A stretch of DNA of 64,000 bases, taken from the IMG/VR virus record IMGVR_UViG_3300030329_004647, positions 168,029 to 232,028 of that record. One strand, written 5' to 3'. The notes below the pieces were generated by a model. The model did not search any database and was not told the DNA's origin. It saw only the letters and a program-made list of their open reading frames with translations. Both the position numbers and the translations under genes were made by a program. Shown here one piece after another: positions 9,145-32,995 of this stretch (positions are counted from its first letter, which is position 1; every line of letters begins with the position of its first letter).

Positions 9145-10878
9145 TTAGAGAGACTGCATTTCCTGTAGTATTTCCGCAAACATGTCTTCTTCTTCCATGT
9201 TATCTCCCATTACAGTGTCTATAATTCTTTTTTTCTGTTGTACTATATTATATATAATACGTTCTATTGTATTTTCAAAAATAGGATATATACATGACAC
9301 ATTTTTCTTTTGTCCTATTCTAAATGCTCTATCTTCCGCTTGAGACATTGTAGCTGGAACAAAAGACAGGTCATTAAATATTACAACCTCAGCCTCTGTA
9401 AGAGTAATACCAACCCCACCAGCAACTATATTTGAAACAAATACTTTTACATTTGAGTCATTTTGAAAATCGTCTACACTTTTTTGTCTATCTTCTTTTT
9501 TCATTTGACCATATAATGGAACAGCTACCTTTTTATATTTTGAAAGAATTTGCATTAGAGGTTCAGTAAAGTTTGTAAAAACAATCACCTTTTTATCTTG
9601 TTCTAAACACTGGTCAATAAGGTCATATGTGTTTTTGAGTTTTTCTAGAGCAATAAGTTGTCTAACCTTCATTAGTTTGGACAGCTGTATTGTTAAACTT
9701 TTATTTTTGTTATCGTTTGCCCAATCCAAATACTCACCAACCTCTCTTTGATATTCCGTAGAATTTAACTCCAAAAAAATTGGCGTTATAATTTTATCTG
9801 GTAAATCTAATATTTCTTCTTTTAGTCTTCTTAAAACTTTTTGTTTAGTTCGGTCCCGTAATTCTTCTAGGTTGGATGCTCCATGAGTTAACCAAATTTT
9901 TCTATTCCCTTTTCTAATCTGATACCCATCACAATATCTTTTAACATAATGAACCCAGTTTTTCGCTACTCTAGAGTCTACTAACTTAAGAATATTATAG
10001 TAATTCATTGGTCTAGAAGTCATAGGTGTACCAGTTAATAACCAAACCTTTTTAATTTTAGAACATAAATTATTCACCAACTTAGTACGTTGAGCTTTAG
10101 GATTAGAAATGTAATGAGCCTCATCTATTATAATTAAATCAAAATTTTCATCTAAAATAGTCGTAATACTCTTATCTATAGAGTGAAAGTTTTTTAATAT
10201 ATCATAATTTATTATTACGAATTTACCACTTTTCCACTTCTTACCCTCAACAATTCCAATTTCTTCTTTACTATAATTTTCTATTTCTCTTTTCCAGTTT
10301 AATTTAAGTGTAGCTGGACATATTACTAATATTTTAGTTGACTTACTCTCAATAGCGGCTATTGTCCCACTAGTAGTTTTACCAACACCCATATCATCAG
10401 CTAAAATAAATTTATCATTACCTAATAATTTTTCTATAGCAATTTTTTGGTGGTCATAAGGCATTCTATGTGAATAAGGAGAGTAGTCTACAGAAACCTT
10501 TCTTTCTGTGTTAACAATAATTTGTGCTTTAGGCACCCAGAAGTCGTTTAAAGGATGAGTATCTATTATCTTCCCCCAAACATGGTAAGCTTTATCACTT
10601 TCACTTAATATTTTTTCTACCCATATTTTTTCTGGTTTTTTTTGTAAAAAGTTTTGTGACATAAGTGTTTCACTTAAATAATCATCTATCTCAATCCACT
10701 TACGAGCTATTTTAGGTACATTTTCATAATTTTTAATAATATAGTCTGCTTGTTTACGAGTGGGCAAAAAGTTTTTAGATAACTTTAAATTGTTTTTTAA
10801 TTTCAATATATAGTTATTTGCCCCCTCATATTTACTTAAGAGACTTAAAGATTCTATTTCAGGAAGTAAGTTATCCAT
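9145..10878 (-). CDS. SNF2/SWI2-family helicase-like ATPase
   Basis: ADDMGVGKT (Walker A), DEAH, LTGTP, QAEDRAFRIGQ (motif VI). Likely start is ATG 10878 (MDNLLPE). Confidence 0.93.
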   Translation of the reverse strand: MDNLLPEIESLSLLSKYEGANNYILKLKNNLKLSKNFLPTRKQADYIIKNYENVPKIARKWIEIDDYLSETLMSQNFLQKKPEKIWVEKILSESDKAYHVWGKIIDTHPLNDFWVPKAQIIVNTERKVSVDYSPYSHRMPYDHQKIAIEKLLGNDKFILADDMGVGKTTSGTIAAIESKSTKILVICPATLKLNWKREIENYSKEEIGIVEGKKWKSGKFVIINYDILKNFHSIDKSITTILDENFDLIIIDEAHYISNPKAQRTKLVNNLCSKIKKVWLLTGTPMTSRPMNYYNILKLVDSRVAKNWVHYVKRYCDGYQIRKGNRKIWLTHGASNLEELRDRTKQKVLRRLKEEILDLPDKIITPIFLELNSTEYQREVGEYLDWANDNKNKSLTIQLSKLMKVRQLIALEKLKNTYDLIDQCLEQDKKVIVFTNFTEPLMQILSKYKKVAVPLYGQMKKEDRQKSVDDFQNDSNVKVFVSNIVAGGVGITLTEAEVVIFNDLSFVPATMSQAEDRAFRIGQKKNVSCIYPIFENTIERIIYNIVQQKKRIIDTVMGDNMEEEDMFAEILQEMQSL

Positions 10879-10932
10879 TATATACAAATATAATAAATTC
10901 TCTAATATAAACAATTAAGTATTTATCTATAT

Positions 10933-12827: not shown

Positions 12828-15800
12828 ATGGCTAACGGTAATAATAGAGTATTCGTATCTCCAGGGGTATACACCTCGGAAAAAGATTTAAGTTTTGTAG
12901 CACAGAGTGTTGGTGTTACAACATTAGGTTTGGTCGGAGAGACCAAAAAAGGGCCAGCTTTTGAACCAATCTTTGTAAGTAATTATAGTGACTTTACAAC
13001 TAGATTTGGTAGTACATCAGCTGACAAATTTGTTGATACACAAATTCCTAAACACGAATTAGCATTTATAGCAAAATCTTACTTATCACAATCAAATCAA
13101 TTGTTTGTGACAAGAGTATTAGGATTAAATGGTTATGATGCAGGACCATCTTGGTCAATAACAACAATCGGTGAAGTAGACCCACTATACGTTTCTGCTG
13201 CAACATCAGCTCAAACAACGAGTAACTGGAGTGACATTATTTACATTCCAATGACCTCAACTACCGCTACGCCAGACGGAATATATTTAACATATAACTC
13301 TGCGACAGGAAAGTTTAGTGACCCTATCACTGATATGACAACATTTGGGGGTGCCAATTTCCCAATTCAAAATTACCAACTAACAGGCCAAACATTTATT
13401 AATGGGTATGGAACTACTTTAGGTACTTTTATTGATGAAATAACCTCTTTTGTTAACACAGTAAATGGTGGGGACAATATGTCTTGGGATGGTTCAGGAC
13501 TAAGTCAATACTGGTATTATGGTGTATTAGGTACAGGAACAACTGTTGGTGGTGAAGGAGCAAATAGTTTTTGTGAACATTACGCTAACACGTGGATGAC
13601 AGGTAATACATCAGGATTATCCATTCAAGCAATAGACCATGAAAATAGATTAGCTGTTGACGCTTCAAACTTCTATGATGACCAAAATGATGGTTGGTAT
13701 GACACTTTATTCGAGTATGAATATGGTGAAGGTGCTAACTGTTACTGTACTTCTTATTCAGGTTCTTCATTTGATATGTTTGGTTATTCAGCTTTAACAG
13801 CTCAAACATATATAGATGAAGTTGACTTAAGTACTAGTGGAGCAAGTACATTCTTTGCTGGTGGACAATTTAATAATGACCCAACATCAGGAGGAACAAG
13901 TACAGAATGGTCAGGAGCTACAGGAGTAAATGGAACAGGTGGACAAGCTGTAATATCGTTTACGGCTACTAGTAGTGGTGGTCCAGAAACTTGGGCATAC
14001 AGAATTGGTTCAACATCAGCTAACGCAACAGGTGTAGTAGCTAATGTATGGAGTTCCCTATACCAAACACCAGTGGGAACATATGATAGTATAGGACCTG
14101 TAACGACACATCCTTATGTACCATCTGATTTTGACGAGGTATTATCAGGAGGAACAGCATCCACAACAACAGTATTAAAGAGTAATCCATATCCAGTACC
14201 ATTAACGCCATTCGATTTCGCGAAGAGTGGTACAACTTGTGATACTAGTATAGGAGCTTACTCAGCTGTTTCAGTAATTTATAGTGGATTTGCTAATATT
14301 GGTAGTTTAGTAGGTGGTAACTTAGGTGGAGCAGGAACTGGATTCGACCAAGGTAATCTATCTTCAGGTATTTCACATACCTTTGTTGGTTTCTCTGGAG
14401 CTGACGGACCAAACTCATATTCTGGGACACTTGCTGTTAATATGGTATTCTATAGTGCTGATTGTCAATCACAAAATCTGTTAACATTACAATTAAGTGG
14501 TTGTGCAGCTGAATATCAAAATGTAAGTGCAGACACTGAATATCACAACTTAGTAGTGGCAACAATGAGAGCTAGAGGACAAAGTTCACTTTCTACAGGA
14601 GGACCAGTCTATACAATTAGTGGTTCATCATCATCCTCAACAGGAGCTTACGGTGATGTAACATTTAATTGTTTAGGAGCTTACCAACCAATAGTTGATG
14701 ACCCATTCTTTAATTTTGGTATAAGTGCTAGAACGGATGGTGGAGCAACATATAACTTTGATGTGAGCATGAATACATCATCTAAAAATTACCTACCAAA
14801 AGTATTAGGTAGAAATGTATTTGATAAAAAAATGGAGGAAGTTCCTATTTTTGTTGAGGAAGTTTACCCTAATATCCTAAAATATGGATTTAATAGAAAT
14901 AGAATTAGAGGCCTAAACTGTTGTTTATTAAAATTACCAGCAGCAAGATGGAACAATACAGGTATGGATTCTATAGGTTGGTACATGCAACAATGGCAAA
15001 CACCAGAAACACCTTACGTAGTTTCAGAATTACGAGGTGAGGATGTATATAGACTATTTAAATTTGTTTCTATTTCAGACGGTACAGAAGCAAATAGAGA
15101 ATATAAAGTATCAATTATAAACATTTCATTTGAAAGATTAGAGTTTGATGTATTAGTTAGAGATTTCTATGATAGTGACGCTAGTCCTGTTGTTTATGAA
15201 AAATTCACAAGATGTAGTTTAGACCCATCATTACCTTCTTTTATAGGAAGAAAAATAGGTACTTCAGATGGTCAATACGAATTAAGGTCTAAATACACAA
15301 TGTTATATTTAACTGAAGAGGTTTTAGATGGAACACTTAAAGACGCTGTTCCAGCAGGTTTTGATTACTACGATTTTAGAAATTATGAAAACGGTGCTGG
15401 TAAAACGTGTAGAGCTATTCCACCGATGTTAAAATATAAAACAAAATACTTTACGGCTGGAGAAGTAGTTTATGACCCACCTTATGATAACGCTGACGGA
15501 AGTGCTAACTCTTATATATCACCAGGTGACAATGTGAGAAAAACATATTTAGGTATTTCTGACACAGTAGGTGCAGCTATAGATTTTGATTTCTTCGAGT
15601 ATAAAGGTAAGAAAACACCAGTATCGGTTTGTACAGATGTTAATGGTGTAAGTTGGGGAACAATCAGAAAAGGTTTCCATATGGATTCAGGAGCTACAAT
15701 AATTGTTGCGGGTTCTGGAACGTATATAACACAATCGGGTACAACTCTTAGTGGTGACTCTATCTTTGAGGTGGGAGCAGCAGACTTTAGAGGTGAACCA

Positions 15801-16913
15801 GCATCAAGTAATCACCCATACAAAAAACTAAATTCTCGTAAATTTACTTTAGCACCTTATGGTGGTTTTGATGGATGGGATGAATACCGTAAGTTTAGAA
15901 GTAATGGTGATTCCTATAGACTTGGACTACAAGGATTCTTAAATGGAGCGTGTAATGACGCGGTTTACCCGTCAGCTGTAGGAGACGGTTCATTTAAAGC
16001 TCTAAGTAGTACTGAAGCAAATACGGATTATTTTGCATACCTTAGAGGTGTACAAACATTCCAAAACCCAGAAGCGGTTAATATTAATGTATTTGCTACA
16101 CCAGGTATTGACTACGTTAACAACCAATCTCTAGTTAAAGAATCTATAGATATGGTAGAAAGTCAAAGAGCTGACTCGTTATATATTACGACAACACCTG
16201 ACTTTAACATGTACGTACCAACATCTTCAGATGTGACAAATCAAATATCACCAACAGAAGCTGGAGATAATTTAGAGGACTCACTAATAGATTCTAACTA
16301 TACGGCAACGTATTATCCATGGATTTTGGTTAGAGATGACAATAGTAATAAACAAATCTATATACCACCAACATCAGAGGTTACTAGAAACTTAGCATTA
16401 ACTGATAATGTAGCATTCCCTTGGTTCGCTTCAGCAGGTTATACACGTGGTTTAGTAAACGCACAAAGAGCTAGAAGAAAACTGACTCAGGACGAAAGAG
16501 ATACGTTATATGTTGATAGAATTAACCCAATAGCGACATTCTCAGATGTAGGACCAATTATTTTTGGACAGAAAACTCTACAAATTAAAGAGTCTGCTCT
16601 TGACAGAATTAATGTTAGAAGATTATTATTACAAACAAGAAAACTAATTTCCGCGGTAGCTGTTAGACTACTATTCGAACAAAATGATGATGTAGTAAGA
16701 CAACAATTCTTAGACCTAGTTAACCCTATATTAGATTCTATTAGAAGAGATAGAGGTTTAACAGACTTTAGAGTTGTACTTTCTAACGACCCAGAAGAAA
16801 TTGATAGAAATGAATTAAATGGTAAGATTTACTTAAAACCTACAAGAGCGTTAGAGTTTATCTTCATAGAATTCTTGATAACACCAACTGGAGCAGAATT
16901 TGAATCAGTTTAA
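12828..16913 (+). CDS. Contractile tail sheath protein (T4 gp18-like), unusually large
   Basis: N-terminal FVSPGVYTSEKDLS...GPAFEP and C-terminal NINVFATPG...YYPW...WFASAG...DRINVRRLL...IYLKPTRALEFIFIEF. Confidence 0.96.
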   Translation: MANGNNRVFVSPGVYTSEKDLSFVAQSVGVTTLGLVGETKKGPAFEPIFVSNYSDFTTRFGSTSADKFVDTQIPKHELAFIAKSYLSQSNQLFVTRVLGLNGYDAGPSWSITTIGEVDPLYVSAATSAQTTSNWSDIIYIPMTSTTATPDGIYLTYNSATGKFSDPITDMTTFGGANFPIQNYQLTGQTFINGYGTTLGTFIDEITSFVNTVNGGDNMSWDGSGLSQYWYYGVLGTGTTVGGEGANSFCEHYANTWMTGNTSGLSIQAIDHENRLAVDASNFYDDQNDGWYDTLFEYEYGEGANCYCTSYSGSSFDMFGYSALTAQTYIDEVDLSTSGASTFFAGGQFNNDPTSGGTSTEWSGATGVNGTGGQAVISFTATSSGGPETWAYRIGSTSANATGVVANVWSSLYQTPVGTYDSIGPVTTHPYVPSDFDEVLSGGTASTTTVLKSNPYPVPLTPFDFAKSGTTCDTSIGAYSAVSVIYSGFANIGSLVGGNLGGAGTGFDQGNLSSGISHTFVGFSGADGPNSYSGTLAVNMVFYSADCQSQNLLTLQLSGCAAEYQNVSADTEYHNLVVATMRARGQSSLSTGGPVYTISGSSSSSTGAYGDVTFNCLGAYQPIVDDPFFNFGISARTDGGATYNFDVSMNTSSKNYLPKVLGRNVFDKKMEEVPIFVEEVYPNILKYGFNRNRIRGLNCCLLKLPAARWNNTGMDSIGWYMQQWQTPETPYVVSELRGEDVYRLFKFVSISDGTEANREYKVSIINISFERLEFDVLVRDFYDSDASPVVYEKFTRCSLDPSLPSFIGRKIGTSDGQYELRSKYTMLYLTEEVLDGTLKDAVPAGFDYYDFRNYENGAGKTCRAIPPMLKYKTKYFTAGEVVYDPPYDNADGSANSYISPGDNVRKTYLGISDTVGAAIDFDFFEYKGKKTPVSVCTDVNGVSWGTIRKGFHMDSGATIIVAGSGTYITQSGTTLSGDSIFEVGAADFRGEPASSNHPYKKLNSRKFTLAPYGGFDGWDEYRKFRSNGDSYRLGLQGFLNGACNDAVYPSAVGDGSFKALSSTEANTDYFAYLRGVQTFQNPEAVNINVFATPGIDYVNNQSLVKESIDMVESQRADSLYITTTPDFNMYVPTSSDVTNQISPTEAGDNLEDSLIDSNYTATYYPWILVRDDNSNKQIYIPPTSEVTRNLALTDNVAFPWFASAGYTRGLVNAQRARRKLTQDERDTLYVDRINPIATFSDVGPIIFGQKTLQIKESALDRINVRRLLLQTRKLISAVAVRLLFEQNDDVVRQQFLDLVNPILDSIRRDRGLTDFRVVLSNDPEEIDRNELNGKIYLKPTRALEFIFIEFLITPTGAEFESV

Positions 16914-16934: not shown

Positions 16935-17219
16935 ATGGAATTGAATAAAGAAATTTTAATAGAAAGTTTAGGTGTGAAGTCGACTGGAGCTAAACATTTT
17001 ACTAATAATAAAAAACAATCAGTTATTATAAGTGAAAAACAACTCGAAAGATTAGTAGAAAAATATGTCAATGAAGATGAAAATGTTGTTAATATCGACA
17101 TACCATCGGGAAGTAACGTAGAAGTTACCCCAAAAGATGAAGATATGGCAGAAGATGTTGTAGCAGGAATCGACAATGACATGATTGATGAGGAAGAATC
17201 TTGTCCAGACGATGTTTAA
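16935..17219 (+). CDS. Small acidic hypothetical protein
   Basis: 94 aa; contains KKQSVIISEKQLERLVEKYVNE. Confidence 0.7.
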   Translation: MELNKEILIESLGVKSTGAKHFTNNKKQSVIISEKQLERLVEKYVNEDENVVNIDIPSGSNVEVTPKDEDMAEDVVAGIDNDMIDEEESCPDDV

Positions 17220-17246
17220 TCTACATTAAGTTTACTTCTTAATATT

Positions 17247-17280
17247 ATATAAAAAACTCCTACACAGGAGTTTTTTATAT
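17247..17280. terminator. Bidirectional intrinsic terminator
   Basis: Perfect 15-bp inverted repeat ATATAAAAAACTCCT-ACAC-AGGAGTTTTTTATAT. Confidence 0.85.
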
Positions 17281-17337
17281 TATAACCATATAGTTTATGT
17301 AAGTTGTATTAACAAAATGTTTTAATATTTATAAGAT

Positions 17338-18198
17338 ATGAGTAAAATTATCATAACAGCAAAACAACTAGAACATCTAAGTAATGTAGTTAAAGAACAA
17401 GCTAGAGCAAATAATGGTGCTGTAAGAGCTTATTCTTTTGATTGGGACGACAATATCCTCCATATGCCTACTAAAATTGCAATTGATTACAATAACGGCA
17501 CAGAATGGGTACCAACCCTCATAACCACTGAAATGTTTTCTAAGGTAAGAGAAAATGAAAATTTTAGGGTAAATGAAGATTCCTTTGTTAATTTTAGAAA
17601 TGATAATGTTTTTTTTGACGACCTTAATGAAGCTTTACAAAAAAGAAGTTTCGCTCCTTCTTTTGAAAAATTTAAAGAATCTTTAATATACGCTAATCCT
17701 TTTTCTATTATTACAGCAAGAGGACATACACCAGAAGTTTTTCCTAAAGGTATAAAAGTAATAATTGGAAATACTTTTAGTGAGGGAGAACTAGAAGATA
17801 TGTTATTTAACATTAAGAAGAAATATCCAGAAACTGTGGACTATTCACCGTGGGACGCGATTGATTTTTATTTAAATGAAAATGAATACCACCCTGTAAC
17901 ATCCGAAGAATTCGGTAAAAAATTCGGAAATAGGTTCATCAATACGGATAACCCTGAAGAAGCTAAAAAAACAGCACTTAGAAATTATATAGAAAAAGTT
18001 GTAAACGGTGTTAGTAAAATAGAAGATGGTAATTATTCACAATTATCTATAGGTTTTAGTGACGATGACTACGGTAATATAAGTGCTGTAATAAATTTAA
18101 TAAAAGATGAACTAAACCAAAAGTATCCACAAGTAAATTTTGTTGTATATGACACATCTAGTGGTGACATAAACAAAATTGTAGTTAAAAGAGAATAG
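17338..18198 (+). CDS. HAD-superfamily phosphatase-like protein
   Basis: Motif I FDWDDNI (DxD), motif II IITARG, conserved Lys (EAKK), motif IV GFSDDD. Confidence 0.75.
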   Translation: MSKIIITAKQLEHLSNVVKEQARANNGAVRAYSFDWDDNILHMPTKIAIDYNNGTEWVPTLITTEMFSKVRENENFRVNEDSFVNFRNDNVFFDDLNEALQKRSFAPSFEKFKESLIYANPFSIITARGHTPEVFPKGIKVIIGNTFSEGELEDMLFNIKKKYPETVDYSPWDAIDFYLNENEYHPVTSEEFGKKFGNRFINTDNPEEAKKTALRNYIEKVVNGVSKIEDGNYSQLSIGFSDDDYGNISAVINLIKDELNQKYPQVNFVVYDTSSGDINKIVVKRE

Positions 18199-18268: not shown

Positions 18269-18757
18269 ATGGCTGATTTATTAATGAAAATGCCCGTTCC
18301 TTATGAACCGAAAAGAAAGAATCGGTTTATTTTGAGATTTGATTCTTCACTGGGTTTAAACGAGTGGTACGTTGAAAGTACATCAAGACCACAAGTAACA
18401 ATAAATTCTGTAGAAATACCTTTCCTAAACACATCTACTTATGTGGCAGGAAGATTTACATGGAATACTGTTAATGTAACATTCAGAGACCCAATCGGTC
18501 CTTCAGCAGCACAAGCGTTGATGGAGTGGGTTAGACTACACGCTGAGTCAGTTACTGGTAGAATGGGATATGCTGCGGGATATAAGAAAAATATCGATTT
18601 AGAATTATTAGACCCTACAGGAGTTGTTGTAGAAAAATGGGTAATGCAAGGTGTATTTTTAACAGATGTTAATTTTAATGACTTATCTTATAGTGATGAC
18701 GGACTATCTAACATTTCTGCTACACTAAGACCAGACAGATGTATATTAGTTTACTAA
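18269..18757 (+). CDS. Tail tube protein (T4 gp19-like)
   Basis: YEPKRKNRFILRF...RPQV...GRFTWNTVNVTFRDP...LDPTGVVVEKW; 162 aa. Confidence 0.92.
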   Translation: MADLLMKMPVPYEPKRKNRFILRFDSSLGLNEWYVESTSRPQVTINSVEIPFLNTSTYVAGRFTWNTVNVTFRDPIGPSAAQALMEWVRLHAESVTGRMGYAAGYKKNIDLELLDPTGVVVEKWVMQGVFLTDVNFNDLSYSDDGLSNISATLRPDRCILVY

Positions 18758-18778
18758 AACTATAAAACATACAATATT

Positions 18779-18805
18779 AAAAAACCCCAGTTATGGGGTT
18801 TTTTT
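18779..18805. terminator. Bidirectional terminator between tube gene and Mom-like gene
   Basis: AAAAAACCCCA-GTTA-TGGGGTTTTTT; the loop contains the minus-strand stop of the Mom-like gene. Confidence 0.85.
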
Positions 18806-19417
18806 ATTTAAAGGGGCAACATTTTTATTTTTGGGATAAGGTTGTTTAATCCACTTAGTTTTAAGGGTTTTATCAAAAACTAACATGTATCTATGTTTTC
18901 TAGTCCTATCCCTCCATTCACCTCGTTTATTTTTTACGGGTCCTCGAGAATGTTTTATAAACGTACCATCACCCAACTCAAACCAAAAATCTTTCTTTTT
19001 ATCTGTTAATCCATAATACGAAAAATTGGTTGCCTGATAAATGTAACCATTATGTAGTTTGGAATCAGCATAAGATATTACAGCTTTAAGAACTGTTTCT
19101 TTTTTAAGAAGTTTAATAGATTTTGAGACGAACCAAGATAATAAATTTTTAAAATTGTGTTCGGGATGTACACACAGTCTTCCCAGTTCATATATTCCCT
19201 CCTGAGAACTCCTATCTAAACCAAAACAACCTTTAACTAATTCAGGCACAGAGGGAGCATGAAAGATACATACACTTATTAACTCATCTTGTTTAAAAAT
19301 TCCGTAATTAAAACCACATCTGAAACCTTTACTTTCTTTTGACAAGTAATGATATTCATTAAGTAGCTTAGCGCATTCGGATTTAGTAATAGCTCTAATG
19401 CTTAAATTTTGAAACAT
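18791..19417 (-). CDS. Mom-like (GNAT-fold) DNA modification protein
   Basis: LLNEYHYL...YELGRLCVHP...SWFVSKSIKLLK...VISYADS...GYIYQATNFSYYG...KHRY resembles the phage Mu Mom family. Confidence 0.75.
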   Translation of the reverse strand: MFQNLSIRAITKSECAKLLNEYHYLSKESKGFRCGFNYGIFKQDELISVCIFHAPSVPELVKGCFGLDRSSQEGIYELGRLCVHPEHNFKNLLSWFVSKSIKLLKKETVLKAVISYADSKLHNGYIYQATNFSYYGLTDKKKDFWFELGDGTFIKHSRGPVKNKRGEWRDRTRKHRYMLVFDKTLKTKWIKQPYPKNKNVAPLNKKTP

Positions 19418-19487
19418 ATAATAATTATATTTTATAATGTTGATATAAAATTATAATAAACTTAAATTAGTATTTAAACGCAAAAAT

Positions 19488-20249
19488 ATGGATTTACAAC
19501 AAAACACACCAGAAATGGAACCACAAGTAGCTTATGACATGGTAGAATTGCCTTCTAAGGGCGTATTTTATCCTGGCAATAAGAAAAGTGTAAAGGTTAG
19601 CTACCTCACAGCTGAAGATGAAAATATTTTAACAGCACCTAATCTTGTACAATCAGGAGAAATGATGGACATTTTATTAGGTAAGAAAATTTTAGATAAA
19701 GATATTGATATAGCAACTTTAGCTGAATGTGATAGACAAGCGGTCCTAATCTTTTTAAGAAACACCGCTTTTGGTTCGGAATACACTTTTAATCTTGTAG
19801 ACCCAGTAACTAATGAAAGTTTTGAACACATAGAAGACTTAAGTAATTTAACATTCAAAGAAGTTAAAATAAGTCCAAACAAAAAAGGAGAATACGAAAC
19901 CACACTCCCAAAAAGTGGACGAAAGGTAATGTTAAAAACCTTGTCACCAAAAGATGAACAAGAATTAAATGACCTTAGAAAAGCTTATGAAAATATTAAA
20001 ATACCACCATCAGTAACCAAAAGAATAGAAAAAATGGTAGTAGAAATAGATGGTATTAGAGACGTAGGTGAAATAGCAAGAACTGTTTCACAATTACCTA
20101 TTGCAGACTCTAAATATATTAGAAAATTTATCGCAGACGCTGAACCTGGATTAGATTTAAGAAGAGAAGTAGTTTCCCCAGCAGGAAACGCTGTATCGTT
20201 CCAGATTAACTTTGGCGTAGAGTTTTTTCGTCCTTTCTTCGGCGTATAG
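19488..20249 (+). CDS. Tail assembly chaperone / baseplate-hub assembly protein (gp26-like; 'G' product)
   Basis: YDMVELPSKGVFYP...VSYLTAEDENILT...LIFLRNTAFGSEY; lies between tube and tape measure genes. Confidence 0.75.
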   Translation: MDLQQNTPEMEPQVAYDMVELPSKGVFYPGNKKSVKVSYLTAEDENILTAPNLVQSGEMMDILLGKKILDKDIDIATLAECDRQAVLIFLRNTAFGSEYTFNLVDPVTNESFEHIEDLSNLTFKEVKISPNKKGEYETTLPKSGRKVMLKTLSPKDEQELNDLRKAYENIKIPPSVTKRIEKMVVEIDGIRDVGEIARTVSQLPIADSKYIRKFIADAEPGLDLRREVVSPAGNAVSFQINFGVEFFRPFFGV

Positions 20250-26884: not shown

Positions 26885-29800
26885 ATGAGTATTAGTGGAA
26901 ATGAAGATATCCTTACGGAAAAAATTGGTGGTAATCTAACGGTAATCAATCCTAATAAAGTAATAACTAATAAAGGGGTTAAAGATAGGTTAGTTAATCA
27001 TGAAGATTTAGTTATATACGCCAATTTAGTAGCAAAAATAGTACCTAGAAGTAAAATTCTTTTAGGAGACGCGGATACAGAATCAGAAGTTGCTATAGAT
27101 TTATTTGGGGGAGAAGTTAATTTCCTTAAACCAAAAGGTAAAAAAAGTTTAGACAGTTCTTGGACCGAAGCATTCACCAATCCAGATTTTAATAAAATTA
27201 CTTATAGTGAAAATGAAGATTTTGCACAGACAGGAGCGTACACTAAAAGTTTAAAAGAAGCTGAAGATTTTCAAGGGTTTGGAATTACCTCTATAAATGT
27301 GGTAATAAACCAATCATTTGTCCCTGAAGTAACTATAAATTTTACAGATATTAGGGGTAAAACCTTATTTGAACAAGGAGACACAGGTGGCCCTTATACA
27401 GCCTTTTTTCACATGCCTTATCCAGTATTCCACCTAACTTTAAAAGGTTATTACGGAACAGCAGTAAAGTACCAACTTAAATTAATGAAATTTAACGCAG
27501 CTTTCGACTCTAGTTCAGGTGATTATAATATTACGTGTAAATTTATTGGTAATCACTCAGCTTTACTAAATGATTTAAATTTACATCAAGCGATGATAGC
27601 TCCGTATATGTATCCGAGTCCAACTCGAGGTGAAGGTGGTGTTAGTACGGGATTAGGTATGCAAATTATGAACGAAGTCTATCAAACTTATGAAGATAGA
27701 GGTTTAATAAAAAAAGACTTTCCTAGATATACAATTTTTGCTTTAATGAATAAAGTAAATCAGTTTGAAACAGAATTAGCTAGTAATTTTAAAAAGGAAG
27801 ACCTACAATTCATGGATGATAAAAAGACCTATCAAGACGAATTAACAAAGTTTTACAATTCTATATTTGGTACTGGTCAATGGTTTGATACTTTTTTAGA
27901 TAAGACTACCGCGACAGTAATACCAACAAACGTTACAGCAAGCGCGGGAACAGAAAATATAGTTGCTTATCAATTGTTAGATGCTACTGACTCTGGTGTA
28001 GCCGCAGCAAACGACGCTTGGGTTAAAAGAAAGGACACCTATGTAGAAAGATTAAATAGTAATTTAACATTTGGTGAAACAGGTCAAAGACCTATAACAG
28101 TAAGTGGTAGATTTGATGTATCACATCAGATAGCTAGTGGTACCTCAAGTACCCTGGAAGGACCATATTGGTATATAGTAGATAAAAAATCGGAATCATT
28201 TGGAATTCAATGGTTAAACGTACAAAAAGAATTTGAAAAAAACTTTAATGAACTACAAACTGAAGTTAGTAAAAATTTAAATAAAACTTTTGTAGAAACA
28301 TTAGGGTTTTATCCATCTATAAGAAATTTGCACGCTGTTATTCTAGCAGGTTCAGATACCTTTATAAGGTTATTAGATAGAGTACATACAGAAGCCTTTA
28401 AACAAAGAAACAATCAAAAAAGATTAAGGGTGTTAGTTCCGGAAGATGTTAAAAATGAAGAAAAAACAGTATTTCCTTGGCCTATATATTATGAAGAAAC
28501 TGAAGACAATGAAAGAATATTACAATATCCAGGAGCTAGTAAAAGTTTATCTATTACAGGAGCATATGACGCTAAATTATGGCCTGAAGTAGAATTTGTT
28601 GAGGAGTATACTAAAGCTAGTGCATTTCACACGGAATCTATAAACGCTCCATTTGAAAACCAATTTGTAACAATAGATTATATACCACTAAGTGTTAGAG
28701 AATTTCCTTTTGATAATGAAGTTTATGGACAGAGTGCCGTTGATAAAATGGTGATGGAAATTTATGACCGTTCATTTGATTTATTAAATTATGGTAGTTT
28801 AACATGGCAAAACAGAAGTTCTGATGTTATACCAGCGATACAAGAACTAGCTCAATATGATGCTGAGGTTTTAGAAAAAAGAATAAAATTAAATAGTAAT
28901 TTAGCAACATTTTTCGGTAATAGTACAGTTACAGATATTAACAGTATTTTTGAATATTTTAATAATGAAAAAGGACAAGACGTTATTCTTAGATGGCAGT
29001 TAGGGTTACCTAATACATCTTATATCAGTCAAAGAAATATAGAAGGTAAAAATATACCAGGAACAAATTATGGTGTTTATCCTGGATATATAAGTTTTAT
29101 ACAATTAGTCGAAACAAAACCATACACCCAAGTACTAAATTATATTCATGACCAAAAATCTGATAGTACATTTGATATGTACCCACTAAGATGGGACATG
29201 GGTTCCGCGTGGATACAAGAAACATTAGCTAACGGACAAACTGCGGACGAAGGAAGTTTTTACACAACTAAAGAAATACAATTAGACCCAGAAGCTAAAT
29301 TATTCTCGACACAAAATCTTAAATATTTTTTATGTAATCATCATGTTATAAATGAAGACCCAACTAACGAAAGTATTATTAATGATGAAATAATAAGTAC
29401 TAAAGATTTAAAGACTAAAGAGGAATGGGAAAGTCATTACCAAGGTACAGACGGTAAACAAATAAAACATATAACTGAAGGTTTAAATCACAGTGGTGAC
29501 TACACAAAAGTTTTATCACTATTTAACACACCTTACTTTGCAAATGCTTTAGCTAAGGGTTATATAGAAAAAGACCAACCAGGAGCTTTTTTAAATTTAG
29601 GGTACATGTTTTTACAAAGTTTACCTATAGCCACAACTAAAGAAAAAATGTTATGGTCACCAGGAAATTACGGTAGTTACATATCACAAATTTTAAATCA
29701 ATTAGCTGCTCATCACCAGATACCTCTAGCTTTTGCATTAAAAATAGGGAGTATATGGTGGAGATATAAAACCGCGGGTATTACAAATCCTGATACAGAT

Positions 29801-32800
29801 GCTGACAATTGGGACGACGCTATAAACAGTGGTACTTTAGGATATTTTAACACAAGTATTAACACAGGTACAGGTCCTGAATTTCTATATACGGATTCAA
29901 TAATGGGATTAGGTTTTTCATACACCTTACCAGACGGAACAATAGCTACAGGAGATAATGGGTCAGAAATATCTTTAGGGATATATCCTAAGTTAATGGC
30001 CGCAGCTCATTATATGGTTACAGGTCAAGACGTTTTAAGTCCAGTAGTTGATGACGCAACATTACTTAATAATTTTAATATTAGTTCAGGTTTTAGTGTT
30101 AATGTTATAAAAGAAACTGACGCGTCATTTAATGCCAACAACCAACAAGTAAATTACTATACAACCTATGGTACAGGAAATTCAGTTACCGTACAATCCA
30201 CCATAGACACAGCGGTAAGTACAGCAGGAGTTCCTTCTGGTGATTATTATATTTTATATCCGTCAGCTGGTGGAATGTTATCTAACGAATTTGAGTCTGC
30301 CGCTGGAGTTACATCCTATAACAATCAAGTAGGTGGACACAACGGTTCCGTGAGATTTTTATGGTCGTTACCACAGTATGGTTATTTTTCAGGTGACACC
30401 TTCCCAGCTAGAGACCAATACTATAAGAAAATTTTTAATGACAAAGACGAACAAGATATTTTCGCTATAAGTAATGGTGGTACCGAATTGACGCAAAGAT
30501 ATTCTTATATTGATGAGTTACTAGCTGTATTTCCTACAGAAGTATTAAATTATTTTGAGGATATGTTTAAAAATTTCTGTCAAAGAAGAAACCCTTCTAC
30601 AGAAGAGATTGAAGGAGAATATACTAGTCTACACCAAGTTTTAGGACAAATACTATATGTTCCTTTAAGTGATGTTAAATTGCCAGACCAAGGAACGGGT
30701 AAGTTTACCTCTAATATTGCAGCGGCACAACACAAAAAAGCTATTAATATACTAGAAACCTTTACTCAACAAAAAGTGTTTTATAAAAAAGGGTCAGTAA
30801 ATAATCTAGATAACGTTATAAATATTGACGGTAACCCCATACAATCTTATCAAGCTTTGGTTTACTTATTAAGAGCTAATGGTACTAGTTCTATGTCTCA
30901 ATTACCAGAAGCTATACAACAAAGTTGGGACCAACCATTTAAAGATATTTTCTTCCCGTATAACAATAATTTACCACCCGACATACCCTTAGCAACCTTT
31001 ATGGTTAATAATCCAGGATTATATTCTACTTTTCAGTATTATTTCCCATCAGCTTTTGGGGGGATAGATATGGTGACCGTCACCAACTCACCGGTATATG
31101 AGTTTTTTAGAGAAATAAATATAGCACCAACAGAAGAAAATGTACCGCTATTTGCCCCAATTATAAGAACATATTATTCTAATGGTAATAACTTAGAAAG
31201 TTTGGGTGAACTAGAAACTACATTATCACAAACACAAAATCAGTACCTAGAACAACTTTTTAATAACTTAAAAAAAATAGAGCCAGATACAAAAGAGGAA
31301 GATGCTATTATTGAAGATGACAGACCACTAATTGTGGCGGACAATTTAAAATTAGAACTATACCAATCCTTCAAACACCTTAATGACGCTTGGATTGCTG
31401 GATTAACTGGTTTGGAAGATAGGACATTACTTGAAAAATTTTATTTTTTAGATAGAGCTAATGAGGATATTGGTGACGAAGCTGTAATTGATATTTTTAT
31501 TATGCAACAATTAGGTAATCCATTTACACCAGACCCTAGTGCATCAGTAGATAGAACTTTAAACAGTTTTCTAAGTAAAATAGCGATGGACAATAACTTC
31601 TTAAAGTTAGACTTACCTTCATATATTAACTTTTTTGGTGTGGGTGACGCAAATTCAAGCTCTCAAGGAAACGCTATGTTTGGTACTTTTACTGAAGTCG
31701 ACACAACTAAATCTGGTCCAGTATTTCTTTACATCTATATCGGAGAAGAATCAACACACTTATCTGTAAAAACGGATAATTATGGATTTAACAACGATTC
31801 TTTTGATTTAAATAAAACAACCCCTAATCCGTTGGTAAGAACAACACCATTAAGCCCAGAAAAACAAGCTAGAAGTAACGCGATAATGGCATACACAGTT
31901 GATTTTGGAATACCTAATCAAAATGTTTTTACTAGTATAAATTTAGACCAATCACAAAGTGAAAATACCTCAGAAAGTTATATTGTTCTAGATGATTTAG
32001 CTTTAGCGGGTGGTGGTAAAAATGTATCTACTAACTCATTAAATTTATTTAACGTTTATAAAACTAGGTCTTACAACTGTTCGGTAGAAGCTATGGGATG
32101 CGCGTTAATACAACCAACCCAATATTTCCAACTAAGATACGTTCCTATGTTTTCTGGTGTTTACATGATTAAAAGCGTTGAACACAGTATAGCTCCAAAT
32201 ACGATGACTACTAAGTTTGAGGGTGTTAGAATACCGATACCAAATCTACCTAAAGTAACTGATTTAATAACTAGAGTACAAACTAGTTTACTAGAAAAAG
32301 TTAAGAGTGCTGTTGAAAAAGCAGACTCACCAGAAGAAGTTCCAGGTGACATGTTTGATTTTACCGAAGAAGAATTAAATCGTGGACCAGAAGAAGAAGG
32401 CGGACCAACTAATCAAACAGCACCAATTGCTGGAATAACCTTTAGTGCACCTGTTGATATTTCTAAAGTTGAAGACCCTAGAACTATTGATAGTAGTAGA
32501 GTTTCAGGTGGCCCAGAAGTGGGAGACCCAAGAAGTGGAGGTAGAGTACATAAAGGTGTGGACCTATATCCTAAAACCGATTTCATGGGTGAAGAACTTG
32601 AAATTACTGCAGCACATAGTGGTAAAATAACCAAAATTGTTAGAAATTGTCTAGATGATAACACAGTTGGTTCTTGTGGTGGAGGTTATGGAAATCACGT
32701 CAGAATTGTAAGAGAAATTGTAGAATGGCCAAGTAATGTTACCTTAGCAGAAGGTACTATAATAAAGGTTGAGACAAGATATTGTCACCTAAAAAGAGGT

Positions 32801-32995
32801 AGTGTAGCCGCTGGTTTAAGTGAAGGTCAAGAAATAAATGATGGTGTATTTTTAGGTCACATGGGAGCTACAGGAAACGCTTCACCTGGTAAAGAACACC
32901 TACATTATGAAGTAAGGGTCACCAAATTAAATAGTAGATTAGCCCCTATAACTAAAGTAGCTGACCCGCTAGAAGGATATATTCCTGGACTATAA
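26885..32995 (+). CDS. Giant baseplate hub protein (gp27/VgrG-like) with C-terminal M23 peptidase
   Basis: Hub-type GITSINV...PEVTINFTDIRG and TRSYNCSVEAMGCALIQPTQYFQL...GVYMIKSVEHSI. C-terminal HKGVD...GGYGNHV...RYCHL...GHMGATG...HLHYEV is the M23 Zn motif. Confidence 0.8.
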   Translation: MSISGNEDILTEKIGGNLTVINPNKVITNKGVKDRLVNHEDLVIYANLVAKIVPRSKILLGDADTESEVAIDLFGGEVNFLKPKGKKSLDSSWTEAFTNPDFNKITYSENEDFAQTGAYTKSLKEAEDFQGFGITSINVVINQSFVPEVTINFTDIRGKTLFEQGDTGGPYTAFFHMPYPVFHLTLKGYYGTAVKYQLKLMKFNAAFDSSSGDYNITCKFIGNHSALLNDLNLHQAMIAPYMYPSPTRGEGGVSTGLGMQIMNEVYQTYEDRGLIKKDFPRYTIFALMNKVNQFETELASNFKKEDLQFMDDKKTYQDELTKFYNSIFGTGQWFDTFLDKTTATVIPTNVTASAGTENIVAYQLLDATDSGVAAANDAWVKRKDTYVERLNSNLTFGETGQRPITVSGRFDVSHQIASGTSSTLEGPYWYIVDKKSESFGIQWLNVQKEFEKNFNELQTEVSKNLNKTFVETLGFYPSIRNLHAVILAGSDTFIRLLDRVHTEAFKQRNNQKRLRVLVPEDVKNEEKTVFPWPIYYEETEDNERILQYPGASKSLSITGAYDAKLWPEVEFVEEYTKASAFHTESINAPFENQFVTIDYIPLSVREFPFDNEVYGQSAVDKMVMEIYDRSFDLLNYGSLTWQNRSSDVIPAIQELAQYDAEVLEKRIKLNSNLATFFGNSTVTDINSIFEYFNNEKGQDVILRWQLGLPNTSYISQRNIEGKNIPGTNYGVYPGYISFIQLVETKPYTQVLNYIHDQKSDSTFDMYPLRWDMGSAWIQETLANGQTADEGSFYTTKEIQLDPEAKLFSTQNLKYFLCNHHVINEDPTNESIINDEIISTKDLKTKEEWESHYQGTDGKQIKHITEGLNHSGDYTKVLSLFNTPYFANALAKGYIEKDQPGAFLNLGYMFLQSLPIATTKEKMLWSPGNYGSYISQILNQLAAHHQIPLAFALKIGSIWWRYKTAGITNPDTDADNWDDAINSGTLGYFNTSINTGTGPEFLYTDSIMGLGFSYTLPDGTIATGDNGSEISLGIYPKLMAAAHYMVTGQDVLSPVVDDATLLNNFNISSGFSVNVIKETDASFNANNQQVNYYTTYGTGNSVTVQSTIDTAVSTAGVPSGDYYILYPSAGGMLSNEFESAAGVTSYNNQVGGHNGSVRFLWSLPQYGYFSGDTFPARDQYYKKIFNDKDEQDIFAISNGGTELTQRYSYIDELLAVFPTEVLNYFEDMFKNFCQRRNPSTEEIEGEYTSLHQVLGQILYVPLSDVKLPDQGTGKFTSNIAAAQHKKAINILETFTQQKVFYKKGSVNNLDNVINIDGNPIQSYQALVYLLRANGTSSMSQLPEAIQQSWDQPFKDIFFPYNNNLPPDIPLATFMVNNPGLYSTFQYYFPSAFGGIDMVTVTNSPVYEFFREINIAPTEENVPLFAPIIRTYYSNGNNLESLGELETTLSQTQNQYLEQLFNNLKKIEPDTKEEDAIIEDDRPLIVADNLKLELYQSFKHLNDAWIAGLTGLEDRTLLEKFYFLDRANEDIGDEAVIDIFIMQQLGNPFTPDPSASVDRTLNSFLSKIAMDNNFLKLDLPSYINFFGVGDANSSSQGNAMFGTFTEVDTTKSGPVFLYIYIGEESTHLSVKTDNYGFNNDSFDLNKTTPNPLVRTTPLSPEKQARSNAIMAYTVDFGIPNQNVFTSINLDQSQSENTSESYIVLDDLALAGGGKNVSTNSLNLFNVYKTRSYNCSVEAMGCALIQPTQYFQLRYVPMFSGVYMIKSVEHSIAPNTMTTKFEGVRIPIPNLPKVTDLITRVQTSLLEKVKSAVEKADSPEEVPGDMFDFTEEELNRGPEEEGGPTNQTAPIAGITFSAPVDISKVEDPRTIDSSRVSGGPEVGDPRSGGRVHKGVDLYPKTDFMGEELEITAAHSGKITKIVRNCLDDNTVGSCGGGYGNHVRIVREIVEWPSNVTLAEGTIIKVETRYCHLKRGSVAAGLSEGQEINDGVFLGHMGATGNASPGKEHLHYEVRVTKLNSRLAPITKVADPLEGYIPGL

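What the first reader, a model, noticed from the sequence alone, without database searches (positions are those of the whole stretch)
18779..19487. Mom-like DNA-modification gene inserted antisense between tail tube and chaperone
Seen: a 208-aa GNAT-like protein with YELGRL, VISYADS and GYIYQATNF segments, on the opposite strand inside the otherwise co-directional tail module and bounded by a bidirectional terminator. Known: Mu Mom converts adenines to N6-carbamoylmethyladenine and protects against restriction. Inference: a moron-like anti-restriction gene that may give this phage a non-methyl hypermodified base.
Basis: partly seen in the sequence, partly recalled or inferred. Interest (0 to 1): 0.65.

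Follow-up and report, generated by a model that had tools for sequence, protein, structure and literature searches.

The report
Mom-family DNA-modification gene in marine jumbo phage
An uncultured marine jumbo phage carries, backwards inside its tail-gene block, an intact relative of phage Mu's Mom enzyme (which decorates DNA adenines to evade restriction); it is a real but ordinary member of a known family, long resident at this site and lost again by deletion in some relatives.

Summary
A 208-aa ORF (18791-19417, minus strand) is the only minus-strand gene in more than 50 kb of plus-strand genes. It lies between the tail tube gene and a T4 gp26-like gene.

It is a true Mom-family GNAT:
- Pfam PF25680 scores 96 bits against a cut-off of 27, over the full length.
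- A profile built only from its marine clade finds one PDB entry, Mu Mom 8BV8.
- The AF2 model (pLDDT 90) matches 8BV8 best (Z 19.1, against 14.3 or less for other GNATs).
- Mu's R111, S124, D149, Y159 and H58/Y59 are invariant. Mu's R151, W48 and W181 are not conserved.

By homology it most likely aminoacylates adenine N6 in phage dsDNA from host charged tRNA (Silva 2026). The product is unverified.

The gene is accessory but old:
- Only 2 of 75 related tube-hub junctions carry it.
- Every copy at 65% identity or more sits in this slot.
- It co-diverges with its flanks, dN/dS is about 0.1, and its GC matches the genome.
- One nested relative shows a deletion scar.

The "bidirectional terminator" is the tube gene's own terminator, with Mom's stop codon in its loop. 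I rate this a new member of a known kind, of modest interest.

The parts
18791..19417 (-). Mom-family GNAT gene, 208 aa. Residues matching Mu Mom functional residues: H23/Y24, R80, N91, S94, D118, H122 (the family-wide His), Y127. C-terminal QPYPK motif.
18779..18804 (.). Bidirectional intrinsic-terminator-like hairpin (A6-CCCC-loop-GGGG-T7). It is the tail-tube terminator, present at empty sites too. The Mom stop codon (18791-18793) sits in its loop, and the last five or so Mom codons are encoded by its 3' arm and T-run.
19418..19487 (.). 70-bp AT-rich divergent intergenic region. Minus-strand promoter-like TTTAAA-17-TATAAT (19478->19450), plus a second TATAAT ending 6 nt before the Mom ATG (possible leaderless start). 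Plus-strand TTGAAA-18-TATAAT (19409-19438) for the downstream gene. No Com-like ORF fits here.
   Evidence: consensus matches only, function not shown
18269..18757 (+). Tail tube gene (left flank of the slot), 162 aa.
   Evidence: (phrog_4542 E=5e-31)
19488..20249 (+). T4 gp26-like 'baseplate hub' / putative tail assembly protein (right flank of the slot), 253 aa. It is followed by a 54-aa DUF6760-like ORF and a 652-aa tape-measure-position protein.

Best explanation
The ORF encodes a functional, stand-alone Mom-family GNAT. By homology with Mu Mom, it most likely acts after replication on the phage's own double-stranded DNA. It would take an aminoacyl group (glycine in Mu) from a host-charged tRNA and place it on N6 of adenines. 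The group would then rearrange to N6-carbamoylmethyl-adenine or a close analogue, which blocks host restriction nucleases. The phage carries no tRNA genes in the held 232 kb, so the donor must be host tRNA. The gene sits antisense in a slot between the tail tube terminator and the next tail gene. It has its own AT-rich promoter region and terminates at the tube terminator read backwards. It was acquired once by an ancestor of one clade of this marine jumbo-phage lineage. It has since been inherited vertically under purifying selection and lost by deletion in several descendants, so it is an old accessory gene. Shown: family membership, fold, conserved catalytic residues, slot polymorphism, co-divergence, purifying selection and one deletion scar. 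Inferred: the donor, the target base, the product, the anti-restriction role and the timing of expression.
For: Family: PF25680 scores 96.4 bits (cut-off 27.1) across profile positions 2-202 of 202; PHROG 1384 E=4.7e-37. A profile of 35 marine relatives without Mu finds only 8bv8_A, E=3.4e-8. hhalign against Mu Mom gives probability 95%. Fold: AF2 pLDDT 89.9. Foldseek top hit is 8BV8 at E=3.5e-11, with generic GNATs at about 7e-6. VIA-align gives Z=19.1 with 177 residues aligned (model 2-196 on chain 37-241), against Z 14.3 or less over about 136 residues for other GNATs. Residues: Mu H58/Y59, R111, S124, D149 and Y159 correspond to H23/Y24, R80, S94, D118 and Y127. All are invariant in 35 clade members, and all are invariant in 68 wider family members except that H58/Y59 are invariant only where covered (49 of the 68). 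Silva et al. 2026 (PMC13219725) show that R111 and S124 are essential and that Gly-tRNAGly is the donor for N6-adenine in dsDNA. Selection: the ORF is intact at 208-214 aa in 8 lineages and dN/dS is 0.06-0.15. History: Mom is absent from 70 of 75 assessable tube-hub junctions. All Mom+ loci fall inside one starred 28-row clade. Copies at 65% identity or more are always in this slot, and copies at 59% or less are always elsewhere. Mom identities track tube and hub identities, rho 0.79 and 0.76. L033 keeps about 47 nt of Mom codons 4-19 as a scar, score 26 against a null mean of 11, reached by 0 of 300 shuffles. GC and GC3 match the genome. No N6/N4, C5 or Dam-type methylase is found in the held 232 kb, and no tRNA genes. 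The gene is present in independent 2025 seawater metagenomes.
Against: There are no chemical data on the DNA. Mu's essential R151 is K120 here, and that column is variable (mostly D/S/E) in the clade. Mu's W48 (dimer interface) and W181 are not conserved. The Mom-specific insertion is about 9 residues shorter and is predicted as beta-hairpins, whereas Mu's resembles a helix-turn-helix. Donor or target specificity could therefore differ. No transcript over Mom was seen in the one metatranscriptome that holds the phage, but coverage there was minimal. Promoters are consensus matches only. The genome is about 72% complete, so other modification genes or tRNAs could lie in the missing part.
Confidence: 0.65

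Rival explanations
1. The protein has the Mom fold and acts on nucleic acid, but its chemistry differs. This 'His-type' enzyme would use another aminoacyl-tRNA or another acyl donor, or act in a different sequence context or on a different base. The phage would then carry a hypermodified base other than N6-carbamoylmethyl-adenine.
For: Mu's essential R151, and also R154, are specific to Mu. All 68 environmental homologues, including the window protein, have an invariant His at the R154 column within AD-x-x-x-H-N-G-Y-I-Y-Q-A-T-N. W48 and W181 are not conserved, and the insertion is shorter and predicted as beta structure. Silva et al. state that co-substrate and substrate could not be predicted from the structure alone.
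Against: R111, S124, D149, Y159 and H58/Y59 are all invariant. Silva et al. report that randomly chosen metagenomic homologues were active in their assay.
Confidence: 0.22
2. The protein is a GNAT that does not target DNA at all. It could acylate host aminoacyl-tRNA or a protein, like the TacT/AtaT toxins or host-takeover factors.
For: The GNAT fold is versatile, and tRNA-binding GNAT toxins superpose on Mom. The gene lies among structural genes, whereas more distant homologues lie among DNA-metabolism genes.
Against: The match to Mom is specific and stands well above all other GNATs. Homologues at 52-58% identity lie in replication modules, next to a DNA methylase or fused to MazG. The basic C-terminal extension and the QPYPK end are shared with Mu Mom.
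Confidence: 0.08
3. The gene is a decaying remnant of a selfish nuclease-GNAT (homing or R-M-like) cassette and has no present function for the phage.
For: In another clade the same slot holds a 525-aa nuclease with a distant Mom-type GNAT domain and a 302-aa DUF559 nuclease. The gene has been lost repeatedly.
Against: There is no nuclease domain. The ORF is intact in 8 lineages with dN/dS about 0.1. Identity to the fused GNAT is only 24%, and that gene is on the opposite strand. The catalytic residues are invariant.
Confidence: 0.05

Closest known systems
Bacteriophage Mu Mom (PDB 8BV8; Pfam PF25680)
   Same: Same Pfam family and the best structural match. The GNAT core and the Mom-specific C-terminal elements are shared. 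H58/Y59, R111, N121, S124, D149, G156 and Y159 are conserved, as is the C-terminal QPYPK motif. Both are stand-alone single-enzyme systems.
   Different: Only about 26% identity over 178 residues. R151, R154, W48 and W181 are not conserved, and a His replaces R154. The insertion is shorter. The N-terminal 35 residues of Mu Mom are absent. There is no Com translational activator and none of the Mu regulatory context. The host genome is a roughly 300-kb marine jumbo phage and not a transposable temperate phage. The gene lies antisense inside the tail module.
'Mom-like DNA modification protein' of PHROG 1384 (for example Listeria phage A511 gp178, Staphylococcus Twort-like phages, Bacillus phage SerPounce)
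   Same: Same His-type active-site loop (AD-x-x-x-H-N-G-Y-I-Y-Q-A-T-N). Stand-alone proteins of about 200 aa in lytic phages. 32-41% identity.
   Different: Those genes lie among early or DNA-metabolism genes or at genome ends. I know of no demonstrated product for them. The window protein belongs to a separate marine clade (50-71% identity within the clade).
REase-Mom fusion proteins of jumbo phages (Iyer et al. 2021, PMC7824862) / PHROG 3339 and 559 'homing/HNH endonuclease'
   Same: They occur in jumbo phages. A member occupies the very same tube-hub slot in a sister clade (L070). The GNAT domains are distantly homologous (24% identity, E=4e-6).
   Different: The window protein has no nuclease domain and scores far better on the Mom profile (96 bits, against 15.5 for the L070 domain). 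It keeps S124 and the His, which the fused domain lacks.
Mom-MazG fusions of marine roseophages (P0116; Roseobacter phage CRP-212 gp15)
   Same: Nearest cultured-phage homologue (52% identity). Same marine Mom clade.
   Different: Fused to a MazG pyrophosphohydrolase, co-directional in the replication module of a 55-kb phage.

Membership tests
Mom family (Pfam PF25680) | Sequence scores above the curated family threshold over the full length | tested here: met
   96.4 bits against a cut-off of 27.1, profile positions 2-202 of 202. A clade profile without Mu hits only 8bv8_A, E=3.4e-8.
Mom family (Pfam PF25680) | GNAT fold that is closest to the Mu Mom crystal structure | tested here: met
   Foldseek top hit 8BV8, E=3.5e-11, TM about 0.65. 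VIA-align Z=19.1 with 177 residues aligned, against 14.3 or less for other GNATs. Model pLDDT 89.9.
Mom family (Pfam PF25680) | Catalytically essential R111 and S124 (Silva 2026), plus D149, Y159 and H58/Y59 | tested here: met
   R80, S94, D118, Y127 and H23/Y24 are invariant in 35 clade members and in 68 wider homologues, with H58/Y59 invariant only where covered.
Mom family (Pfam PF25680) | R151 (essential in Mu Mom) | tested here: not met
   The aligned residue is K120. The column is variable in the clade and across the family. The family has an invariant His at Mu's R154 column. R151 is therefore a feature of Mu's subfamily and does not define the family.
Mom family (Pfam PF25680) | Mom-specific HTH-like insertion (Mu residues about 175-209), essential for activity | tested here: inconclusive
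   An insertion is present at about residues 148-172, and the structural alignment runs on to the C-terminus. It is about 9 residues shorter and is predicted as beta-strands. W181 is not conserved.
Mom family (Pfam PF25680) | Dimerisation through W48 | tested here: not met
   The aligned position is S13 and the column is variable. Oligomeric state was not tested.
Mom family (Pfam PF25680) | Uses Gly-tRNAGly to make N6-carbamoylmethyl-dA in dsDNA at SAS sites | not testable with these tools
   Needs biochemistry or modification-aware sequencing. For reference, SAS contexts cover 10.9% of adenines in the 232-kb contig.
Mu mom operon regulation (Com, C, Dam/OxyR) | Overlapping upstream com gene that encodes a zinc-finger translational activator | tested here: not met
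   Only 70 bp separate the Mom start from the divergent downstream gene, and no ORF fits there. In Mu, com overlaps the mom start.
Moron (accessory gene inserted between conserved phage genes) | Present in some relatives and absent in others at the same junction | tested here: met
   2 of 75 assessable junctions are filled with Mom, 70 are empty (59-243 bp) and 3 hold nuclease genes.
Moron (accessory gene inserted between conserved phage genes) | Own promoter and terminator | tested here: inconclusive
   Only promoter-like consensus matches. The terminator is shared with the tube gene and pre-exists at empty sites.
Moron (accessory gene inserted between conserved phage genes) | Atypical base composition that indicates recent foreign origin | tested here: not met
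   GC 0.313 and GC3 0.215, against a genome value of 0.323 +/- 0.033 and neighbouring GC3 of 0.19-0.24. Mom co-diverges with its flanks.
REase-Mom fusion / free-standing homing endonuclease (PHROG 3339/559) | Nuclease domain (Vsr/DUF559-like or HNH) | tested here: not met
   The window protein matches only the C-terminal GNAT part of those profiles and has no nuclease domain.

The most novel reading that the evidence does not exclude
The His-type Mom enzymes, to which this abundant marine jumbo-phage clade belongs, lack Mu's essential R151 and its W48 and W181. They may install a different tRNA-derived (or otherwise acyl-derived) adduct on DNA than N6-carbamoylmethyl-adenine. If so, a cosmopolitan uncultured ocean phage lineage would carry an undescribed hypermodified base. 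Its natural Mom+ and Mom- sister genomes would give ready-made contrasts for modification-aware metagenomic sequencing.
Probability: 0.2. Interest if true: 0.7.

Novelty: new member of a known kind. Interest (0 to 1): 0.33.

Why it matters
Mom is the only known enzyme that uses charged tRNA to hypermodify DNA, and its mechanism was settled only in 2026. This locus shows that a stand-alone Mom is stably maintained in a globally distributed, uncultured marine jumbo-phage lineage, found in metagenomes from 14 studies. It appears to be the only recognisable DNA-modifying enzyme in the held part of the genome. Closely related genomes with and without the gene, including one with a fresh deletion scar, coexist in public data. 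SMRT or nanopore kinetics on marine viromes could therefore test directly whether momylation occurs in the ocean and what it costs or buys the phage. The family-wide His-for-Arg difference from Mu flags which residue to probe for donor or target specificity. None of this changes what is known about the family, so the finding is a solid annotation and not a discovery.

Tried and rejected
(1) Single-sequence phmmer against PDB found nothing relevant. The clade profile was needed.

(2) blastn of the 7-kb region against cultured phages found no match. The nearest cultured tube and polB relatives are at most 41% and 25% identical, so the host could not be assigned.

(3) Recent horizontal acquisition by this phage is rejected. 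GC and GC3 match the genome, Mom co-diverges with its flanks, and the clade is bound to this slot.

(4) Direct descent of the solo Mom from the nuclease-GNAT gene found in the same slot in L070 is rejected as unsupported. The two share only 24% identity, lie on opposite strands, and the L070 domain lacks S124 and the His.

(5) The deletion-scar test for the window's own sister clade (L013, L020, L022, L023) was only suggestive, p about 0.007-0.05 uncorrected. I do not claim loss there. Only the L033 scar is solid.

(6) Expression: the single metatranscriptome holding this phage had contigs only on the HAD-like and tube genes. That is uninformative for Mom. The joints listed by read laying had short sides and came from 90-95% relatives, so I did not interpret them.

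(7) The supplement of Silva et al., which holds the sequences of active Homologs A and B, is not held. I could not check whether a His-type Mom has been shown to be active.

(8) The big representative-protein search and complex prediction were not used, because the family scans had already settled the identity.

Full report
**Observation**

The ORF exists as described. It runs 18791..19417 on the minus strand and encodes 208 aa with the YELGRL, VISYADS and GYIYQATNF segments. Between 10.9 and 64 kb every long ORF is on the plus strand. All other minus-strand ORFs of 90 aa or more are nested inside longer plus-strand genes, so this is the only antisense gene in the block.

The flanking genes are:
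- Upstream, the tail tube gene (18269-18757; phrog_4542 E=5e-31).
- Downstream, a T4 gp26-like 'baseplate hub' gene (19488-20249; phrog_150 E=3e-9; PF12322 below its cut-off). It is followed by a 54-aa DUF6760-like ORF and a 652-aa protein in the tape-measure position.

The window is the last 64 kb of a 232-kb IMG/VR contig that CheckV rates 72% complete. GC is 32%, so this is a jumbo phage of about 300 kb.

**What the protein is**

Sequence evidence:
- Pfam Mom (PF25680) matches at 96.4 bits against a gathering score of 27.1, over profile positions 2-202 of 202.
- PHROG 1384 'Mom-like DNA modification protein' matches at E=4.7e-37.
- Direct BLASTP against Mu Mom gives 26% identity over 178 residues, E=3e-6, and includes the shared C-terminal QPYPK motif.
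- A profile built from 35 marine relatives, without Mu, finds exactly one PDB sequence, 8bv8_A 'Methylcarbamoylase mom', at E=3.4e-8.

Structural evidence:
- The AlphaFold2 model is confident (pLDDT 89.9, pTM 0.83).
- Its best Foldseek match is 8BV8 at E=3.5e-11, against about 7e-6 for generic GNATs.
- VIA-align gives Z=19.1 with 177 residues aligned (model 2-196 on chain 37-241). The next GNATs reach Z 14.3 or less and align only the core of about 136 residues.

**Current knowledge of the family**

Silva et al. 2026 (PMC13219725) showed the following for Mu Mom:
- It transfers glycine from Gly-tRNAGly to N6 of adenine in dsDNA at SAS sites.
- An on-base rearrangement then gives N6-carbamoylmethyl-dA.
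- R111, S124 and R151 are essential, and D149A also greatly reduces activity.
- H58, Y59, Y159, W48 (dimer interface) and W181 strongly affect activity.
- An HTH-like insertion at about residues 175-209 is required.

**Residue test**

I mapped these residues by HMM and hhalign alignments and by column counts.

| Mu Mom residue | Window residue | Conservation |
|---|---|---|
| H58 / Y59 | H23 / Y24 | invariant in 35 clade members, and in wider homologues where covered |
| R111 | R80 | invariant in 35 clade members and 68 wider homologues |
| N121 | N91 | invariant in the clade |
| S124 | S94 | invariant in 35 clade members and 68 wider homologues |
| D149 | D118 | invariant in 35 clade members and 68 wider homologues |
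| Y159 | Y127 | invariant in 35 clade members and 68 wider homologues |
| R151 | K120 | not conserved; the column is variable, mostly D/S/E in the clade |
| R154 | H122 | all 68 environmental proteins have His here |
| W48, W181 | S13, G151 | not conserved |

On the R151/R154 loop Mu is the outlier. The window protein has the majority form, AD-x-x-x-H-N-G-Y-I-Y-Q-A-T-N.

An insertion is present at about residues 148-172. It is roughly nine residues shorter than Mu's and is predicted as beta-hairpins.

I therefore file the protein as a member of the Mom family. The exact donor and product remain an extrapolation.

**Genomic setting and regulation**

The hairpin at 18779-18804 folds at -14.3 and -13.9 kcal/mol on the two strands (z about -3.2) and has U-runs on both sides. 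The same kind of hairpin follows the tube gene at empty sites in relatives. It is therefore the tube terminator, and Mom uses it from the other side.

Mom's stop codon lies in the hairpin loop, and its last codons are encoded by the stem and the T-run. The same is true in L004, L005 and L009.

The 70-bp Mom-hub spacer holds promoter-like hexamers in both directions. One TATAAT ends 6 nt before the Mom ATG. These are consensus matches only. No com-like gene fits in the spacer, so Mu's regulatory circuit is absent.

The held 232 kb has no tRNA genes. It also has no N6/N4, C5 or Dam-type DNA methyltransferase. Any aminoacyl-tRNA donor would therefore be the host's, and Mom is the only recognisable DNA-modification enzyme seen.

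**Is it a moron?**

The tube protein identifies at least 596 related viral contigs, and the best 80 are 80-100% identical. Of 75 junctions that could be assessed:
- 70 have tube and hub 59-243 bp apart.
- 2 carry Mom: L011, which is essentially this phage, and L029.
- 3 carry other genes: a 525-aa phrog_3339 'homing endonuclease' in L068 and L070, and a 302-aa zinc-finger/DUF559 nuclease in L076.

The site is therefore an insertion hot spot and Mom is accessory. A relative that is 93% complete (G001, 298 kb) has no Mom at all. Another (G002) carries a Mom domain in a 490-aa protein elsewhere in its genome.

The gene is nevertheless not a recent arrival:
- On a tube+hub tree, all nine Mom+ rows lie inside one well-supported 28-row clade. 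They form two groups, and one empty-site locus (L033) is nested inside the second. This requires at least 2-3 gain or loss events.
- Every Mom at 65% identity or more to the window's is in this slot (L004-L009, L029, L094, L101-L105). Every one at 59% or less is in another context: replication modules, next to a C5 methylase, or fused to MazG.
- Pairwise Mom identities track those of the tube and hub, with rho 0.79 and 0.76.
- All eight lineages keep intact ORFs of 208-214 aa, with dN/dS of 0.06-0.15.
- GC and GC3 are indistinguishable from the genome.
- L033 retains about 47 nt of Mom codons 4-19 abutting the hairpin. The alignment score is 26 against a null mean of 11, reached by 0 of 300 shuffles. 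This is a deletion scar.

The window's own sister group shows only a suggestive scar, and I do not rely on it.

The most economical history is one acquisition in the ancestor of the 28-row clade, followed by vertical descent under purifying selection and repeated deletion.

**Occurrence**

The stretch is held by marine metagenomes of 14 studies from 2014 to 2025. Independent 2025 seawater assemblies carry the Mom gene. One metatranscriptome had small contigs only on the HAD-like and tube genes, which is uninformative for Mom. The nearest cultured phages are distant: tube identity is at most 41%, to phages of Microcystis, Rhodothermus and Flavobacterium. Only 1 of 27 genes has an SD-like motif. 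An FCB-group host is possible but unproven.

**Verdict**

- The gene is an old resident and not a recent moron.
- The terminator is shared with the tube gene and lies at one end only.
- The current mechanism for the family is tRNA-dependent.
- The product in this phage is unverified.

Mom homologues are already known in the thousands from viromes and have been noted in jumbo phages. I rate this a new member of a known kind, with modest interest of 0.33. The main open question is whether His-type Moms make the same adduct as Mu; I put the probability that they do not at about 0.2.

Noticed in passing
L070:4554-6131 (+) and L068 (same slot between tube and hub): A 525-aa protein (phrog_3339 'homing endonuclease', 396 bits) sits in the same slot. 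It combines DUF7487, a Vsr/DUF559-like nuclease motif and a C-terminal GNAT distantly homologous to Mom (24% identity to the window protein, E=4e-6). So the same junction is occupied by Mom-type GNAT genes of two very different architectures in two clades.
   Followed up: partly
L076:4550-5458 (+): A third kind of insert at the tube-hub junction: a 302-aa protein with a C2H2 zinc finger and a DUF559 nuclease, hitting 'homing endonuclease' PHROGs. The junction is an insertion hot spot.
   Followed up: partly
L092:685-2157 (+) in G002 (256-kb relative): A 490-aa protein with a C-terminal Mom domain (69 bits) and an unassigned N-terminal part of about 270 aa, at a different genome position in a relative whose tube-hub slot holds the nuclease gene.
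   Followed up: partly
L003 (Roseobacter phage CRP-212, MZ892988.1 10354-11274) and L099/L100 (P0116): Mom-MazG fusion proteins (PF25680 + PF03819, 310 aa) occur in marine roseophage-like genomes. In GenBank, CRP-212 gp15 is annotated only as MazG, and the Mom match begins 171 nt upstream of the annotated start. The start is probably mis-called.
   Followed up: partly
G000:C1 complement 90124-90528 (outside the window): ARAGORN calls a tmRNA-like gene (tag GKTLAKLATLGLVREESAVTVA) in the phage contig, and no tRNA genes anywhere in the 232 kb. Not checked against Rfam.
   Followed up: no
window 12828-16913 (+): The tail sheath protein is 1361 aa, and only the C-terminal 300 or so residues match sheath profiles. 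The N-terminal 1000 or so residues are unassigned. Relatives have sheaths of about 1160 aa.
   Followed up: no
window 16935-18198 and L004-L009, L094 between sheath and tube: The sheath-tube interval is also variable among relatives. It holds a HAD-like protein here. In relatives it holds HAD_SAK_1-like and DUF2608-like genes, an AAA_33/zeta-toxin-like kinase on the opposite strand, and a DeoC aldolase in L094.
   Followed up: no
window 26885-32995 (+): A 2036-aa protein with a C-terminal M23 peptidase domain, probably a tail-associated lysin or giant structural protein.
   Followed up: no
window, start regions of 27 plus-strand genes: Only 1 of 27 genes has a Shine-Dalgarno-like motif within 20 nt upstream. 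Together with distant tube and polB similarity to phages of Flavobacterium, Rhodothermus and Salinibacter, this hints at an FCB-group host.
   Followed up: partly
window 1184-3904 (+), 9145-10914 (-), 38968-40872 (+): A family B DNA polymerase, an SNF2-type helicase and a class II-like ribonucleotide reductase fragment. These replication and nucleotide genes flank the structural block.
   Followed up: no
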